Source: Bugula neritina
Taxonomy: Eukaryota; Animalia; Bryozoa
NCBI GenBank assembly: GCA_964035545.1
Contig: OZ037766.1
Span: forward strand, 8,174,722-8,238,721
DNA: 64,000 bases
Direction of reading: 5' to 3'
This document shows positions 7,280-15,687 of the stretch, piece after piece. Each line of letters starts with the position of its first letter. The first letter of the stretch is position 1. The position numbers were made by a program, and so were the translations under genes. The notes beneath the pieces were generated by a model. It searched no databases. It saw only the letters and a list, made by a program, of their open reading frames with translations, and was not told where the DNA came from.

Positions 7280-7617
7280 TCACTATCACTATCAGTCACT
7301 CACCAGACTCGGTAACACTAACAATAAGTATAACTTAAACTATAAGTAATGAATAACTAACATAATGATTTTAATTTATAATTATCATTATGATTATTAT
7401 TATCATTATGATTATGATATTGATTAAGTTTAACTAAATGAATAACTGTAACACTAACAGTCACTAACAGTAAGTGTAACACTTTGACTTAGACTGTAAG
7501 TGTAAGAGTAAGTGTTAGTAAGTTAGTCAGTAAGTCTAACAGTAACAGTATGAGTATCAGTATGACTATGAGTATGAGTAACTCAAACTGTGACTAACAC
7601 TAACAGTAACACTAACT
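7280..7617 (+). repeat. Degenerate ~6-bp-periodic tract rich in ACTAAC, GTAAGT and GTATGA in the inferred 5'UTR intron of SR gene A
   Basis: 7 ACTAAC and 5 perfect GTAAGT counted directly, plus agtatg/actatg runs. Confidence 0.7.
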
Positions 7618-7635
7618 GCGAATTCCTTCTTTATC

Positions 7636-7940: not shown

Positions 7941-10427
7941 ATGTCCCGAGGAGGTGATTTAGAGTGTAAAGTATATGTTGGCGATTTGCCCAGAGATGCT
8001 TCAGAAAAAGAGTTGGAAAAAGAGTTCAGTTATTATGGAAGGTAAAATTAGTTTATTTCATCACAGTTGTTAGCATATGTTGAAATAACACTTGTTAGCT
8101 CATTTGTAATCATGTATATTCTATTATTGTGATATTTTAGATTGCGTAAAGTTTGGGTAGCTCGTAATCCTCCAGGCTTTGCCTTCATTGAGTTTGAAGA
8201 TCCTCGTGACGCCGATGATGCCATTAAAGCTTTGGATGGACAGTGAGTCATTTTATACTATTTTAGTTGCTGTGATTTCTGTTTTTGCTTTCAAAATGTG
8301 CGATTCATATGAATAGCCTGGTATGTAGGCATGTGTTATTTTAGAACCATGTTTGGAGAACGTATTCGAGTAGAACCTTCATCTGGGAAGAGTAGAGCTA
8401 AACCTTGGCAGAGAGAGAGTAGAGGCTATGGTGGTGGTGGGGGTGGTGGGCGAGGACCCCCTCGCTATGATTCCTACCGAGCACCAGCTCGTCCTGGCCG
8501 ACCATTTGATCCTAGAGATAAATGCTACAAATGCGGCGAGACGGGACATTACGCCTATGATTGTCGAGAGAGCGGCTCTGGTGGCGGAAGGCGCAGATCT
8601 AGGTAAGAAGTGTCTCTCAAACAAAATTAAACCACCTGTTGTAGCTGCTTGGTGGGTTGTTTCAGTATGTAGTAGCTCATCCTTATCTGTGGGCATCTGT
8701 TAAATTTATTAATGTGTACCAGAGAAAAATCTGGAATCATTACATCTTTTTATCAAAGCAAAATATGATTCGGAAGACATCAAGTGGGACCTGAAACATG
8801 TTATTGTAATCCTACAACTTAAGATTGGGTTCTAATGCTAGTGGAGTTCAAAGCTAGTCAAATGAGTCCTATTTGTAAAAAGAAATGCTTACTCCAAAAA
8901 TCAATTTAATAGATATAGTACCAATAGAGAGCCCACATAATTGTGTTTATAGTGCAGTTTCTCTGTAAATGTTGATGTACATATTCACTATAATGCTTTC
9001 AGATATCAAAAAATCAAACTCTTACAACATTCTGAGAGTCAACTAGACTATGTCATCAACCTCCTAATTAGATCTACACTTCCTTTTTTCAACTGATCAG
9101 CATTGAGTCAAAATGTCACCTTTGCTCATCAACAGTTGAGAAACATACGGCATTCGCCTAAAATAAGAGCCGTCAACTCAAATTTGAGCAATTTGTTGCA
9201 ACTAGAGCAGACAATACGGCAGAGTGACTTTCCTTGCCACGCCTCTACTGGCCACACTTGCTCAACCTGCCAGTAGTTGTCTACTCTACTTGAGACATAT
9301 TTACTGTCCTTGATTCTACAATAGAGTGTCATCTAGATTGGCAGCGTGCAGCATGCAACACTTGACGTTCAACTTGTCATCACTTCCTTTCTTCGACAAT
9401 TTGTTGACTTAGGAAGGTAAAACAAAAAGTCTGGTTGAAAATTAGCTGCTCTGTATATTCTAAAACGAGTCTGCACTCGTTTTATTTCAAGTAGAGTAGG
9501 TGTTGATAAATTATGTGCATATCAACATAAAATGTAGTAGAAGTACAGGTATTGTGAGCCCTGCGTGGTCATGACCTCTTATAGTCCTGTTATCATAATA
9601 TTTATGTTTCCCTTTCTCAGAATTAAAAATGTAACATTTAGTTATCTGTTTTCTTGTTTTTTTGCCCCATTTATCAAGTAATGCCAATTAAAGTAGCATG
9701 TTTCCTTACAGGTCTAGATCTAGGTCTAGGTCTCGCTCTCCACGCGATAGACGAAGGAGAAGTTACTCAAGGAGCAAGAGTAGATCTAGGTCCAGAGCTC
9801 GAAGCAATAGAAGGTATATACTCTAGTTGGTCTGCTTTCCTACAGTCAACTAGTCAACATAAGCATTTTGGTTACTTTTAATAAAATATGCTTCCTTGAT
9901 TACAAGTCTGTTAATGCAGTGCTTCAATGTATTAGCTCTAGCTAGCCTTATTGTTGAACAATATGTTCTTTATTTCACCTCTTCAAACTCCTGCTTATAT
10001 TATGGATGTTTTGCCTATTCTATCTCAAAGCATTTTTCAATAAGGTTTTAGCTATTTTCCTTTCTAAATTAAAAATAAAATTATAATTAATTGGGTAAAA
10101 ATGCAATAGTTCCAGCTCTAAAAAGTAAATCACCATGTTTTGTCAGATGAAGGCAGTGGAGTTTTTCTCAAAGTTTAAATCTATTTTGGACTCCTGTCAT
10201 GAAATATTGAATGAAGTTAACATTATAGAATTTGCCCGAAAATCACAATCTTGTAATAGCATTTTTATATTTTGAATATTGTGAGTAATTACTGATGCAT
10301 TGTGGTCATTTGACATACTTCAGTATAATATGCTTTCTTATGAAAGTCTTGATCAATCGAGATTATTTGTGAATACTCTTTGTATTGGATCTTGTGTACT
10401 TGTAGTCGCTCAGGATCTAGAGACTGA
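7941..10427 (+). CDS. SRSF7: SR splicing factor, SRSF7/9G8-like (RRM + CCHC zinc knuckle + RS domain), ~194 aa; 'SR-A'
   Basis: Exons 7941-8041, 8141-8242, 8345-8602, 9712-9813, 10406-10427. [11 protein letters not shown]...[24 protein letters not shown] is typical of SRSF3/7. Knuckle [14 protein letters not shown] (8523-8564). RS tail [29 protein letters not shown]. Confidence 0.93.
9003..9416 (+). other. Candidate poison (PTC) cassette exon of SR-A
   Basis: tttcag acceptor and AAG|GTAAAA donor, in the intron between knuckle and RS exons. In-frame TGA at 9094-9096. Seven TCAAC plus several TCTAC in 414 nt. Confidence 0.7.
10147..10280 (+). other. Candidate second stop-containing cassette or alternative last exon of SR-A
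   Basis: ttttgtcag|A TGA gives an immediate in-frame stop. GTGAGT donor at 10281, upstream of the RS-type last exon at 10406. Confidence 0.4.
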
Positions 10428-11883
10428 AGGGAATGTGTGTCAGCAGATGCTGCTGCAAACATGAGTACTGATAACATTAGTGTTGTGTTTTATGTAAATA
10501 ATAATGTTTATATCCGTGTAGCTCAACTTTCATCATCATATTTATCTGATATGTAATCAATATATAACAAGGTTTTCTTGTGTATTATATTGTATTAAAG
10601 TTCTCGTGATCTTATGATCTTCATAAACAAAATAGTGTTAACTTTGCTTTTAATTTATGACGAACTTTTGTGGAATTTCTGTAAATGAGTTGTATGCATT
10701 GAGCTAAATAGCGGGTGATTTATTGATTTGTTTCTTCATTATAATTTTTTTCAATAATTAACCCAAATATAATTGTTAAATTTTACATAAAACGTAATTA
10801 TATTTAATGTCATCCCAATATCATATAATTGGAAGGTGGTTTTAGTAGTTGACACAAACCAAGATTTCACTTTTTTGTCTAAATTATGAATGATTTCCTG
10901 TTTCAACAATTTCTTCCCAATACCTTTAAAACTAGGCATCGGATATTTTTTATTCTTGGTCTAAAATTGTATGTAATGCATGTGTAAAATTATTTCAATG
11001 GATGCAAGCTACCTCATGCCTGTTGGCTTATTAACAACTAGATTTGATGATTCTTCATGAGTCAATCAATTGCAACCTTGTGTTAAGTGCTACCTCAATC
11101 ACACCATCAACTCGAATTTTAGAAAGGCTCAATAAATATTTGTAAAAAAGTATTTTAGATCATGTTTCTAACAAGCCTATTTGGAATGTGTGTTGAATTA
11201 AATCGGGTGCTCAAGTCTGTGCTGTTATAGGATTATAATAAATATTTTACAGTCACAAGGTAACTAATAGGGGTTCACTTGCATTTTCTGCTTTGTAACA
11301 ACCTAACAAGAAGCATCTTTACTATAATGACAAGTGTTTAGAGAAAAATAAATTTTCTGAGTTCTAACAACTTTGCTGTGTTAGGGTGCATGGTAAATGC
11401 TCCATTCATATAGCATGCCTTTACCATGTCCATGTTTACTGCATGCATTCTGTATAGCAAGTTTGTGCACAGCTATTGGATAATAGCCCATAATTATCTT
11501 TGTTGCTGCACCAACTGCAGGGCCTACTGTCGGGCGTTGGTAATATATTATAATGTGAACTTTCTCTCATCAAATGCTCTTCCTGACATCATCAATACCC
11601 CTGCAGCCTGCTAATATTCTAAAAATGTTAATACTAAATTAGCCTAAATTTACAATATCTAGCAGCTCGTGTGATAATATTAATACATTATAGATTATAG
11701 TATATAGTGGTTGCAAGTAATTGGCCTGTAATTTATAGAAAACACGAACTGTTAATTGTTCTTTGAATTAAAAGAATGGTAATAAATATTTTTATGGCTG
11801 CAATGGGCTCATGTGGCACTCGTTGTGGAAACATGCAGTATTACTATATTGCGATTATGTCCTCTTGTGCAAATTTGGTCCAT

Positions 11884-11935
11884 TTCGGCTGCACTTCGCG
11901 CTTAAATATCGGCGCATTATCGTATTTCCGGTTCA
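11884..11935 (+). promoter_or_regulatory. Probable core promoter of SR gene B with ETS-type site ATTTCCGGT
   Basis: CpG-dense patch in AT-rich DNA. ACCGGAAAT on the minus strand at 11924-11932, ~100 bp upstream of the first coding exon. Confidence 0.45.
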
Positions 11936-12032
11936 AGCACCACACTGAGGAAGGCCTTGTTTGTCAAAGTCGGTTACCAGCTGCTACTCAAGCAGTTTTA
12001 ACAAGTTTTTGTTTGTAGCCTACTGCTTCATC

Positions 12033-14475
12033 ATTGATTATTACGGCGAAGACGACCGAAGGCGAAATCGCCGGGAAGATGTCGAATGCAAAGTATATGT
12101 AGGTGACCTAAGTAAAGATGCATCTGAACAGGAGCTGGAGAAAGAGTTTGCTGCTTACGGCAGGTGAGGTGAACTTCAACTTGAAGTTGATATGATCATG
12201 AATGATAATGATGATGATATGGTTTAATTTTACTACTTTTGTTTAATTGTTTGGCACTTGAAATTGTATCACTTTATTGGTAAATCTTAGTTCTGCCATG
12301 ATGATGATCGCTACTAATAATAATATAAAAGTAAAAGACAAAAGTGAAAAGCGATATGTAAAGATGATATTAAATTTAATAATAATTTAAACCAAAGACA
12401 AGTGAAAGTGAAAATCCAATATGAAATTGAATAAATATCAACATCAGTAATACTAATAGTATCACTTTAACTATACGTATTACTATTAGTATTAGTATTA
12501 GTATTACTATTAGTGTTTGGTTATTAGTTAGTGTAACTATAAGTATAAGTATAGTTCATTTAAATATAAAATTCAGTATTCAATTGAAGATGAATAACCA
12601 GGGTTGGGGTAATTGTAATTTGTAATTGATGTATAAAAATGTGATTCTAATAGTAATTAATTACATATCTAATGTAATTGATTTTTGAAATTAATTTAAT
12701 GATTACATGTCAATTACTTCATATTTTTGAATTTTTAAGTCTCATACTTTTCCTACCATTACAATGTCTTCTGTTAAATAACAACTAAACAAGTTCAGAT
12801 TAATTCAATGTAGTATTGTATCACCCTATAAATCAATGTGAAACTAAAGGATGTTCTCCTGTGTCAAAATTGCCCAGGTAGTTGGACTGCAGAAGTGAGA
12901 TTATATATAGCTTGCCTTAATTTTTTTTAATCTAGTATGTTTATATTTATTTTGTTATAGAATTAAGAAAGTTTGGGTCGCCAGAAACCCTCCAGGTTTT
13001 GCATTTGTGGAGTTTGAAGACCCCAGAGATGCGGAGGATGCTATTTCGGGTATGAATGGACAGTAAGTTTTATTGATTATACTTTGTACTATTATACTAA
13101 ACTGCTGTGTTTATTAAATATCATAGTTGTATGCTTGTGTGCAGTATAAGGGTAAATACAGTCATACATTCTAAGTACATTACTTTTATGTAAAGTTTTT
13201 CTGTACAGCTACATGTTAAATATTTGTTTTGAAAGAAGGGGACGTCTGCAATTTATTAGAATAATGTGGTGTTCATTACCAGCTTTCTCGGCTATGGGTA
13301 TATGCAATTTTGAACATGGTCAGTGTTGGTAAAAATTTGAGTTCTCGAATTGTTACTTTTTCAGAGATTTCTGTGGCCAACGTATCAGAGTAGAGCAGGC
13401 CTCTGTTAGACGGTCTGGACGCGGTGGTGGGCGTGGTGGAGGATATAGCCGAGGTCCACCTCGATACGACTCATACAGGGGAGGACGAGATGGCGGCGGT
13501 AGAGGTGGCTATGGCGGCGGTGGTAGAGGAGGCTATGGAAGTGGCGGTAGAGGCGGCTATGGGGGTCGCGGCGGCGGTGGTTACAAATATGGAGAGTCTG
13601 GTAGCTATGGAGGAGGTAGCAGCAGCAGCGGCAGCAGGTATTTTTTGTTCTCTAGTATCTCAAGGTGTTGACTATTTTTTAAATAAATTATTCGTTTAAT
13701 TCACTGGCTTGCATAGAATTAAAACAATATATATTAATTGTTCTTGTTGAGCTTCTAATGAATAAATATAGAATTTGCTTTGTTTAATTCTAACTGGGAT
13801 TTGAGTAAATGATTTGTTTCAGCATGAGCCTTTTTAATTCGTGTTGTCATACTTTTAGGTTGCTAATAGCATGGTTATTACAACTTCTGCTTCATGGGGG
13901 TCATGTTAAGGGCAACTTGCTTATTGGCTGATAAAATATATCTGCTGCCAACTTGAAAGTGCATCTCCAATTTAATTCGGCAATCATCAGCCCATCCAGT
14001 CACTGCATAGTGGACAGATGTAGCCAATGTACATCCGCCAATCAGCCTTGTCTTAATATATCCTACAAGTTCACTTCCTTCAATAGCTTCAGTGTATTGT
14101 ACAACTTGCCCGCCAGCTAGGCTGCTCAGCGTTAAATTACAATTCTGAATTTTCTTCACCTCATAAACTTACACAAAACTGCATCACAACATCTTCACTG
14201 AGTTGTATGTTACTCAATCAGGTTTGTAATGTCTGGTAAAAAATTGAAGTTTTACATTATTTCACTATAATAAAAAATACAATTTCAGTAGAGCTAGTGA
14301 AAATTATTGTAAAAGTCCCAAAGATAATACTGTGAGCTGTGCAATGTTTTATTTGAATCTATGTTTTACCGCATGTTGGAGATTTGATTGAAAGGTTTGT
14401 GTATTTTATAGGAGTTATGGTCGAGACAGACGTCATAGTTATTCTCGTAGCAGGAGCAGGTCACCTGGACATTAA
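12033..14475 (+). CDS. Tandem SRSF3/7-like paralog: RRM + RGG/GY-rich region + degenerate knuckle + short RS tail, ~189 aa if started at ATT 12033; 'SR-B'
   Basis: Exons 12033(?)-12163, 12961-13062, 13365-13637, 14412-14475 (TAA), plus a 3'UTR intron 14487-15140 and AATAAA near 15347. Intron positions and phases match SR-A. RRM is closely similar ([32 protein letters not shown]) and the linker [10 protein letters not shown] is shared. Start codon uncertain. Confidence 0.88.
13859..14221 (+). other. Candidate poison cassette exon of SR-B
   Basis: ttttag acceptor (alternative in-frame acceptor at 13822) and CAG|GTTTGT donor. In-frame TGA at 13929-13931. Enriched in CAACTT/CATC. Same intron as the SR-A cassette. 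Confidence 0.55.
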
Positions 14476-14601
14476 CAAGTTTCGATGTAAGTTTCATAGC
14501 TTATAAAACAATCACATGGGTTTATACTCGCCATCACTATGAGAATTCCTGATGAAAATGACCTGCTTTTCTATTGTGGCAATTGTGCAATTATAACCAA
14601 T

Positions 14602-14680
14602 GGCCTTTACCGGGATTTGAACTTCTGACCTTGTTTTTACTAAGCCAGTACTCTAACCCTTAGGGCCTAGGCCCTAGACC
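14602..14680 (-). mobile_element. Degenerate tRNA-like head (probable tRNA-derived SINE fragment)
   Basis: Minus strand reads ...GGCCCTAAGGGTTAGAGTACTGGCTTAGTAA...GGTCAGAAGTTCAAATCCCGG: A-box-like and B-box (GTTCAAATC) at tRNA-like spacing, but the stems do not pair well. Confidence 0.45.
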
Positions 14681-15687
14681 ATAGATTATATTATGAGTGT
14701 GATATATTAGGCATGGCAACTGAGAATAATTTGTCTTTAAAATTGGCTTTATCAAATAGGACTTAGTTATGCATGTCCTGTTGTATTGCTATCATACAAG
14801 TGCATGAATCATCTTCAGTGATGCAACACGAAGTACAGCATTGGTTCTTCATGCAATGTGTTTTGTACTGCTTTGGCCTGTAAATTAAGCATAATATTTC
14901 CAGTTTCTTTACATCATAAAGATGGGACAACTACATAAATCTATTAGAGATTTGGTTATTGGCTAAACATAATCTTTGAATACAAATATTTTTATGCATG
15001 TAAAATGGACTTCTAATGTGTAAAACATCATCTTTTACTCTTAAATAAGCCTAAATATTATAGATTTGTTTTGTGTAGTCAATCCTGAATAAACAAGCTA
15101 TACTGTACAATTTTTATGAATATGAATTTTTCTTTTACAGGTGCTGTAGAATTACAAGCTAAGAGAGCCTATGGTATAGAGCTTGTAACTACAAAAAACT
15201 ATGTGAAAAATTACGTGCATGACTTACTAATTTGGGCTCCTTTGCAGCTGTAGTGTCATTGTATATTTCCTATTATAATCATTGTTCATTTTCTTTATGA
15301 CTTAGGTATAAGCATTTAATTAAAATGTTATAAATGTGTTATTTGTAATAAACCGCAAAATAAATATATATATATATAAAGTTACAATACTTATTTCTAC
15401 TAGTTACCAGCTTACAAAACTTAAAATATGCTGATAAAGAAACATAAAATAAAATACAAATCTACACAAATATTGTGGTAATAAATAAAAGGGTCTGTAA
15501 AAGATGGGTTGTCAATTGTTTTAGTATTAATTTACCTGTGTTAGTAAATTGTTCATAAATTCCATGTCTTCAAGTTTCAAAAATAGTAAATTTAGTGACA
15601 TCCTTTCTATAAAATATTTTGAAGCTTTCTACAAAGTTGCTATTGAATCGCCCCCTCCCCCCTTTACATTCAGTAAGGGTGAGTGTA

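What the first reader, a model, noticed from the sequence alone, without database searches (positions are those of the whole stretch)
7941..14475. Tandem SR-protein pair that may form a cross-regulating splicing module
Seen: two adjacent same-strand genes with matching intron positions and phases and closely similar RRMs. A is a canonical SRSF7-like protein. B has lost the knuckle ligands, shortened the RS tail, gained RGG repeats and lacks an in-frame AUG. Both retain a stop-containing cassette in the homologous intron. Known: vertebrate SRSF3 and SRSF7 auto- and cross-regulate through poison exons, and Drosophila RSF1 (RRM + G/R/S-rich tail) antagonises SR proteins. Inference: a lineage-specific duplication produced an activator plus a modified competitor with similar RNA specificity, linked by NMD feedback and possibly translational control.
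Basis: partly seen in the sequence, partly recalled or inferred. Interest (0 to 1): 0.85.

Follow-up and report, generated by a model that had tools for sequence, protein, structure and literature searches.

The report
Bryozoan SR duplicate starting at AUU
In moss animals (bryozoans) a splicing-factor gene was duplicated; both copies keep a self-limiting 'poison' exon, and the second copy is expressed and conserved yet appears to start its protein at the unusual codon AUU instead of AUG, which has not been described for this protein family as far as I could find.

Summary
The window is very probably Bugula neritina. Two tandem SRSF7-family genes share intron positions and phases, and RNA contigs from four studies confirm every junction tested. 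B groups with A in a bryozoan clade, not with SRSF3/RBP1 (AU p 0.008), and is under strong purifying selection (dN/dS 0.014). The pair is syntenic in Watersipora. B's poison cassette is spliced in; A's cassette acceptor is used, but its conserved donor was not seen used. Both cassettes are more conserved than their flanking introns. Corrections: a third paralogue (C) carries a similar predicted cassette; knuckle loss is seen only in Bugula; a third bryozoan has one gene at this locus. B's cassette lacks the GAY motifs of A's, and B has Ala at the SRSF3 Ser81 RNA contact, so partial decoupling is as likely as a matched activator/competitor pair. Cross-regulation is untested. The strongest new point is B's start: no in-frame AUG, but an ATT in A-3/G+4 context, invariant in three Bugula assemblies and Watersipora, at the coding boundary; a more distant orthologue has AUG there. 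The scan noted this only on this window.

The parts
7941..8041 (+). Gene A coding exon 1 (AUG start, RRM RNP2)
   Evidence: 83% identical to Watersipora A exon; not covered by the RNA laying
8141..8242 (+). Gene A exon 2 (RRM RNP1)
8345..8602 (+). Gene A exon 3 (RRM end, Gly linker, CCHC zinc knuckle at 8523-8564)
   Evidence: Pfam zf-CCHC E 1e-7; donor 8602 used in RNA
8958..9002 (+). Second alternative acceptor of A intron 3 (AG at 8956-8957)
   Evidence: contigs of X2 and X3 begin at 8955 (table 8); inferred from contig starts, no joint listed
9003..9416 (+). A poison cassette / alternative 3' splice site; in-frame stop at 9094-9096; C-rich, WCWWC-rich, GAY present
   Evidence: acceptor used in X2, X6; 98.6% identical between Bugula lineages (Fisher p 3e-6 against flanks); acceptor and donor motifs conserved in 3 other species; donor use not seen
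9712..9813 (+). Gene A exon 4 (RS domain)
10406..10714 (+). Gene A last exon (stop 10425-10427, 3' UTR)
   Evidence: joint 9813-10406 in 3 runs; contigs reach 10714
11987..12032 (+). Gene B 5' leader, unspliced across the AG at 12018-12019; no ATG for 176 nt upstream of the ATT
   Evidence: X3 contig 11996-12160 plus loose end
12033..12035 (+). Proposed AUU start codon of B, A at -3 and G at +4
   Evidence: invariant in window, L006, L012 and Watersipora; only shared in-frame near-cognate codon; AUG in equivalent context in L015; inferred, not shown by ribosome data
12036..12163 (+). Gene B exon 1 coding part (Asp/Arg-rich N-terminal extension, RRM RNP2)
   Evidence: 6 of 6 changes between Bugula lineages synonymous; Pfam
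12079..12102 (+). First AUG of the B mRNA: out of frame, 7-codon ORF
   Evidence: out-of-frame AUGs also in orthologues but at non-homologous Asp codons, possibly incidental
12961..13062 (+). Gene B exon 2 (RRM RNP1)
13365..13637 (+). Gene B exon 3 (RRM end with Ala at Ser81-equivalent, RGG/GY tract, decayed knuckle at 13579-13620)
13860..14221 (+). B poison cassette exon; stop at 13864-13866; C-rich, CNYC-rich, GAY-poor
   Evidence: both junctions in RNA; 99.2% identical between Bugula lineages (p 0.002); acceptor conserved in Watersipora and L015, used in L020
14412..14486 (+). Gene B exon 4 (short RS tail, stop 14473-14475)
   Evidence: joint in all 4 runs
14487..15140 (+).
   Evidence: loose ends at 14489 in X2, X3, X6 match sequence after 15141; GT..AG

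Best explanation
An SRSF7-type gene duplicated within bryozoans, giving C (dispersed) and then the tandem pair A and B. All three inherited one unproductive splicing event in the intron after the knuckle exon. SHOWN: B and the tested 3' part of A are transcribed and spliced; the B cassette is included in some transcripts; A's cassette acceptor is used; intron-retaining forms exist; cassette stops lie 250-390 nt before the cassette donor; the cassettes are under strong selection. INFERRED from the known SRSF3/SRSF7 mechanism: rising protein binds the C-rich cassette, promotes its inclusion or intron retention, and the transcript is lost by NMD or nuclear detention. B diverged faster: Ser81 to Ala in the RRM, an RGG-rich linker, a shorter RS tail, a drifted knuckle that finally decayed in Bugula, and a cassette emptied of GAY motifs. 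This replays the SRSF7-to-SRSF3-like path and probably loosened, but did not abolish, cross-talk, since WCWWC motifs remain in all cassettes. In the lineage of Bugula and Watersipora B also exchanged its AUG for an AUU in optimal context (INFERRED, about 0.8 on its own). Most scanning ribosomes would pass it and meet a short out-of-frame ORF, so B protein is made at low yield and in proportion to how lax start-codon selection is.
For: Junctions and isoforms in 4 studies. Tree: bryozoan A+B+C 97/86, A+B 99/84, B 96/96; B+SRSF3/RBP1 rejected. dN/dS 0.023 (A) and 0.014 (B) between Bugula lineages. Synteny in Watersipora. Cassette identity 98.6% and 99.2% against 90-96% in flanks. C content 24-30% in 9 cassettes against 9-16% in control introns, WCWWC above shuffles in most. 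GAY 7/1139 nt in B cassettes against 41/1144 in A. AUU: 20 of 21 nt around it identical between Bugula and Watersipora while only 24 of 68 same-residue RRM codons are identical; 3/3 in-frame changes upstream non-synonymous plus a 2-nt indel, 6/6 downstream synonymous (p 0.012); AUG-started orthologue with a similar N-terminus; two public annotations reach an AUG only through unrelated upstream exons.
Against: No ribosome profiling or N-terminal peptide. Contigs cannot give transcript starts, so a rare upstream exon is not excluded, and the Watersipora 5' structure is predicted only. The RNA runs come from a different Bugula lineage than the window (they carry L006/L012-type variants). A's cassette donor was never seen used. 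The motif contrasts were found after looking, rest on 3 related species per gene, and reflect GA dinucleotide depletion rather than GAY as such. The tree has 82 columns; under LG+G4 the bryozoan clades fall to 84-86 bootstrap. The downstream hairpin that could help AUU is not significant in the window (z -1.2) and is not conserved.
Confidence: 0.6

Rival explanations
1. One reading: A is a splicing activator and B an RSF1-like competitor with the same RNA specificity; the two form a reciprocal two-gene NMD circuit.
For: RRM surface residues Tyr13, Trp40, Arg43, Asn44, Phe48 and Glu79 are kept in B. Both cassettes share WCWWC enrichment. B's RS tail is short. Human SRSF3 promotes the SRSF7 poison cassette (PMC3439968), and close SR paralogues tend to compete (PMC9022966).
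Against: Knuckle intact in two other B orthologues; Ser81 to Ala; cassette motif content has diverged; a third paralogue has a similar cassette; one bryozoan has a single gene at this locus; B still ends in RS repeats; no functional data.
Confidence: 0.2
2. The loops are fully decoupled: each gene only autoregulates, and B has moved to another job (for example mRNA export, translation or granules through its RGG tract), with tandem position a mere relic of duplication.
For: Long B stem branch (0.25 changes per column); RGG tract held invariant between Bugula lineages apart from one Gly insertion; GAY depletion in B cassettes; Lareau and Brenner argue that paralogues start cross-regulated and then decouple (PMC4379411).
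Against: The cassette stayed at the homologous site in all three paralogues and kept the same class of C-rich motif; the RRMs remain close.
Confidence: 0.25
3. B has an ordinary AUG on an upstream exon that the contigs missed (as both public gene models assume), or starts at another near-cognate codon.
For: A pyrimidine-rich AG at 12018-12019 looks like an acceptor; A and Watersipora B have upstream non-coding exons by prediction; NCBI models for both species splice to an upstream AUG.
Against: No contig between 10740 and 11940 and no joint into exon 1 in four runs; an X3 contig crosses the AG unspliced. The Bugula model's first exon lies in A's 3' UTR (10461) and its frame is broken in the window by a 2-nt indel. 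The pyrimidine tract is degraded in the other lineage. The three AUG mini-exon candidates are weak and uncovered. The two annotated N-termini are unrelated.
Confidence: 0.15
4. B is a transcribed pseudogene that lost its start codon.
For: No in-frame AUG; decayed knuckle in Bugula.
Against: One non-synonymous against 22 synonymous changes over 190 codons; intact frame in Watersipora with the same ATT.
Confidence: 0.02

Closest known systems
Vertebrate SRSF7 (9G8) / SRSF3 (SRp20) pair
   Same: Single RRM of this subfamily (best PDB matches 2HVZ, 2I38, 9ASQ), knuckle in one member and not the other, conserved poison cassette plus intron retention after the RRM/knuckle exon, C-rich G-poor cassette motifs (PMC3439968, PMC9022966).
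   Different: Independent duplication inside bryozoans, tandem, three paralogues. B has an RGG tract, Ala at Ser81 and an AUU start. Cross-regulation is shown in mouse cells, untested here.
SRSF4/SRSF6 shared poison cassette (Lareau and Brenner 2015, PMC4379411)
   Same: A poison exon inherited by both products of an SR gene duplication.
   Different: Different subfamily; here the cassette stays strongly constrained in both copies and diverges in motif content.
Drosophila RSF1 and RBP1
   Same: Single RRM with a Gly/Arg/Ser-rich tail and no knuckle, as in Bugula B (RSF1 anatomy and antagonism from memory; PMC4274639 counts it among eight SR proteins).
   Different: B does not group with RBP1/SRSF3; RSF1 itself was not in the tree; the resemblance is convergent and antagonism is not shown.
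Genes initiated solely at non-AUG codons: TEAD1 (AUU), EIF4G2/DAP5 (GUG); PTEN-beta isoform (AUU)
   Same: Near-cognate codon in favourable Kozak context as the only start of the main ORF (PMC5666671).
   Different: No SR-protein case came up in my paper searches; here an AUG-started orthologue exists, so the switch can be placed on a tree; no conserved downstream hairpin.

Membership tests
SRSF7/9G8 subfamily (gene A) | One N-terminal RRM of the SRSF3/7 type | tested here: met
   Pfam RRM_1 per exon; tree inside spiralian SRSF7
SRSF7/9G8 subfamily (gene A) | CCHC zinc knuckle between RRM and RS domain | tested here: met
   zf-CCHC 32 bits, over cut-off
SRSF7/9G8 subfamily (gene A) | C-terminal RS domain (about 50 aa, over 40% R+S with RS repeats; definition from memory) | tested here: met
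   last 50 aa 76% R+S, 24 RS/SR dipeptides
SRSF7/9G8 subfamily (gene B) | Descent from an SRSF7-type gene | tested here: met
   A+B clade; shared intron positions; orthologues keep the knuckle
SRSF7/9G8 subfamily (gene B) | CCHC zinc knuckle | tested here: not met
   absent in Bugula B; present but drifted in Watersipora and JGI orthologues
Canonical SR protein (gene B) | RS domain of about 50 aa with over 40% R+S in RS repeats | tested here: inconclusive
   last 50 aa 44% R+S, partly a Ser run; 8 dipeptides, longest run 3
SRSF3/RBP1 clade (gene B) | Orthology by RRM phylogeny | tested here: not met
   p-AU 0.0076
RSF1-type SR antagonists | Orthology to RSF1 | not tested
   no RSF1 sequence among fetched proteins; B is nested in a bryozoan SRSF7 clade, which argues against it
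RSF1-type SR antagonists | Represses splicing or blocks SR activity | not testable with these tools
   needs splicing assays
SR poison cassette exon | Alternative exon with in-frame stop more than 50 nt before a downstream junction, seen in RNA | tested here: met
   B: both junctions, stop 355 nt before donor. A: acceptor used, donor only conserved
SR poison cassette exon | Exceptional sequence conservation | tested here: met
SR poison cassette exon | NMD sensitivity and response to the gene's own product | not testable with these tools
   no NMD-inhibited or perturbation data
Sole non-AUG start genes | No in-frame AUG before the conserved coding region; conserved near-cognate codon in strong context | tested here: met
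Sole non-AUG start genes | Initiation shown at that codon | not testable with these tools
   needs ribosome profiling, N-terminal proteomics or reporter mutation

The most novel reading that the evidence does not exclude
B is an SR-family regulator whose only start is a conserved AUU, so its level reads out start-codon stringency (eIF1/eIF5/5MP balance, stress) and passes that signal, through shared C-rich poison cassettes, to the splicing of A and C. That would couple translation-initiation fidelity to an SR splicing network, with the AUG-to-AUU switch, knuckle decay and cassette motif drift each placeable on the bryozoan tree.
Probability: 0.2. Interest if true: 0.8.

Novelty: new variant of a known kind. 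Interest (0 to 1): 0.55.

Why it matters
Poison-exon feedback in SR genes is well known, so the pair alone is a new instance. Two things add to it. First, it looks like a sole, conserved AUU start on an SR protein, for which I found no precedent; two public annotations attach unrelated N-termini to avoid it. Second, the bryozoan trio is an independent replay of the SRSF7-to-SRSF3 path with intermediates still alive: knuckle intact, drifted or decayed, and cassette motifs diverging alongside. It makes directly testable the proposal of Lareau and Brenner that duplicated SR genes begin cross-regulated and then decouple.

Tried and rejected
Upstream AUG exon through the AG at 12019: no RNA support, tract degraded in the other lineage. 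Assembly error (ATG read as ATT): ATT in three Bugula assemblies and Watersipora. An AUG supplied by a trans-spliced leader: joining at either predicted acceptor gives the wrong frame or a stop, and the only 5' loose end is sequencing adapter (my reasoning). Downstream hairpin aiding AUU: present in Bugula but z -1.2 (window) and -2.5 (L006), not conserved in Watersipora. GAY enrichment over dinucleotide shuffles in A cassettes: none; the contrast is depletion in B. Placing the single-gene species L042 by flanking genes: equidistant from Bugula and Watersipora, unresolved. The Watersipora A dN/dS is invalid (exon 2 was mis-picked) and is not used. The bacterial promoter scan does not apply. 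The metagenome scan gave only one further B orthologue. The SRp20/9G8 structure paper was not held; a later structure was used instead. Spliced models were never sent to a search tool: searches were exon by exon or by stored protein id, and joined translations were built only inside scripts for frame checks, trees and dN/dS.
Full report
Identity. The window lies on contig C2 of a 216-Mb genome. The first exon of gene B matches a cluster that holds KAF6032336.1, SRSF7 of Bugula neritina. That assembly (L012) aligns to the window at about 89-91% over both genes, so the window is B. neritina or a very close member of that species complex. Spliced models were searched exon by exon or by stored ids; the joined search step was left out, and joined translations exist only inside scripts.

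Observation. Gene A (7941-10427) encodes 194 aa: RRM, Gly linker, CCHC knuckle, RS domain. Gene B (12033-14475) has the same first three introns at the same codons, all phase 2, an RGG/GY tract in place of the knuckle and a short RS tail. RNA contigs from four studies laid on 8540-14520 confirm all constitutive junctions in that stretch and reveal a further intron in B's 3' UTR, 11 nt after the stop. B's cassette 13860-14221 is joined on both sides, and full retention of intron 3 is also seen. For A, the acceptor at 9003 is used in two runs and probably a second at 8958, but these contigs read through to exon 4; the donor at 9416 was not seen used. Contigs drop rare forms, and cassette inclusion is the form NMD should remove, so this is not evidence of absence. 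The donor motif is kept in Watersipora, in a JGI metatranscriptome species and in L042.

Origin. Watersipora subatra has the same tandem pair between the same flanking genes. A marine metatranscriptome holds A and B orthologues of an unnamed, faster-evolving species that groups with the bryozoans. A third paralogue, C, lies on another contig with the same introns. RRM trees give bryozoan A+B+C (97/86), A+B (99/84) and B (96/96), inside spiralian SRSF7 and away from RBP1. With a simpler model and fewer rows the first two fall to 86/89 and 84/84, but forcing B with SRSF3/RBP1 is rejected (p-AU 0.0076). One further bryozoan-like contig (L042) has both flanking genes and a single SRSF7 gene between them; whether B was lost or never present there is unresolved.

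Selection. Between the two Bugula lineages A has 1 non-synonymous and 14 synonymous changes (dN/dS 0.023) and B has 1 and 22 (0.014). B is a working gene, its RGG tract included. The cassettes are 98.6% (A) and 99.2% (B) identical, against 90-96% for the flanking parts of the same introns (Fisher p 3e-6 and 0.002), as expected for SR poison exons (PMC4379411). All seven A- and B-type cassettes tested carry an in-frame stop 250-390 nt before their donor.

How B changed. The knuckle is intact in Watersipora B and in the JGI B, though it has lost the conserved preceding motif and the aromatic residues of A and C; only Bugula B has replaced the ligands. All three B proteins have Ala where SRSF3 has Ser81, whose side chain hydrogen-bonds the first C of CNNC (PMC11100773); 182 of 199 fetched family members have Ser there. 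All nine cassettes are C-rich (24-30% against 9-16% in control introns), and most are enriched in WCWWC. B cassettes hold 7 GAY in 1139 nt and A cassettes 41 in 1144, while CNYC is commoner in B (70 against 45). The knuckle is reported to shift SRSF7 from CNYC to GAY (PMC9022966). The pattern fits each cassette being tuned to its own protein, with residual shared motifs. It is a post-hoc contrast on three related species.

The start codon. B has no in-frame ATG, and no ATG in any frame for 176 nt upstream of 12033 (2.9% of random window positions). An RNA contig runs unspliced from about 11987 through exon 1; nothing covers 10740-11940. The ATT at 12033 has A at -3 and G at +4 in the window, in L006, in L012 and in Watersipora, and is the only in-frame near-cognate codon they share. 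Twenty of 21 bases around it are identical between Bugula and Watersipora, although only 24 of 68 same-residue RRM codons are identical (about 0.002 for six codons, post hoc). Between Bugula lineages the three in-frame changes just upstream are non-synonymous and a 2-nt indel breaks the frame, while all six downstream in exon 1 are synonymous (p 0.012). The JGI orthologue starts with AUG in the same kind of context and a similar Asp-Tyr...Asp-Asp/Arg-rich N-terminus. Both NCBI models reach an AUG through unrelated upstream exons; the Bugula one begins inside A's 3' UTR. Sole AUU initiation is known for TEAD1 (PMC5666671). I found no SR-protein case and no paper on these bryozoan genes. The first AUG of the mRNA is out of frame and opens 7 codons; similar AUGs in orthologues fall on different Asp codons and may be incidental.

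Mechanism and verdict. Shown: expression, junctions, B cassette use, A alternative acceptor, conservation, origin by duplication within bryozoans. Inferred: NMD-linked autoregulation of each paralogue (likely, by homology to SRSF3/SRSF7, PMC3439968), AUU initiation of B (about 0.8), some cross-talk among A, B and C (about even), and B as a dedicated antagonist of A (about 0.2). The finding is real. It is a new variant of the known SR poison-exon network, and the AUU start is the part a specialist would not expect. Interest 0.55.

Noticed in passing
G000:C7 near 657244 (L003, minus strand; predicted cassette L003 1056-674): Third SRSF7 paralogue C, 182 aa with intact knuckle and the same introns; intron 3 holds a C-rich, TCAAC-rich predicted cassette, also present in another bryozoan's C (L007 1319-1642).
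   Followed up: partly
L042 2789-4467: A bryozoan-like contig with the same flanking genes but a single SRSF7 gene, whose RRM has some B-like residues; loss of B or pre-duplication state.
   Followed up: partly
window 13396 to 12092: One RNA contig (run X2) joins mid-exon 3 back to mid-exon 1 of B at non-canonical sites; seen in one run only, probably a library chimera.
   Followed up: no
Bugula B seems to lack the equivalent leader intron that Watersipora B has by prediction.
   Followed up: no
window 10461: The NCBI model KAF6032336.1 starts in A's 3' UTR and ends by reading into B intron 3; A itself is not among the called genes of that assembly stretch. Both look like annotation errors.
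   Followed up: yes
window 7280-7620 and 12434-12552; L003 2170-2380: Six-base-period simple repeats (ACTAAC/AGTATT-like) occur upstream of A, in B intron 1 and upstream of C; partial matches also appear among RNA contigs from elsewhere.
   Followed up: no
window 15690 onwards, minus strand: Convergent neighbour with C2 and MUN domains (UNC13D/BAIAP3-like by domain content), syntenic in Watersipora and L042.
   Followed up: no
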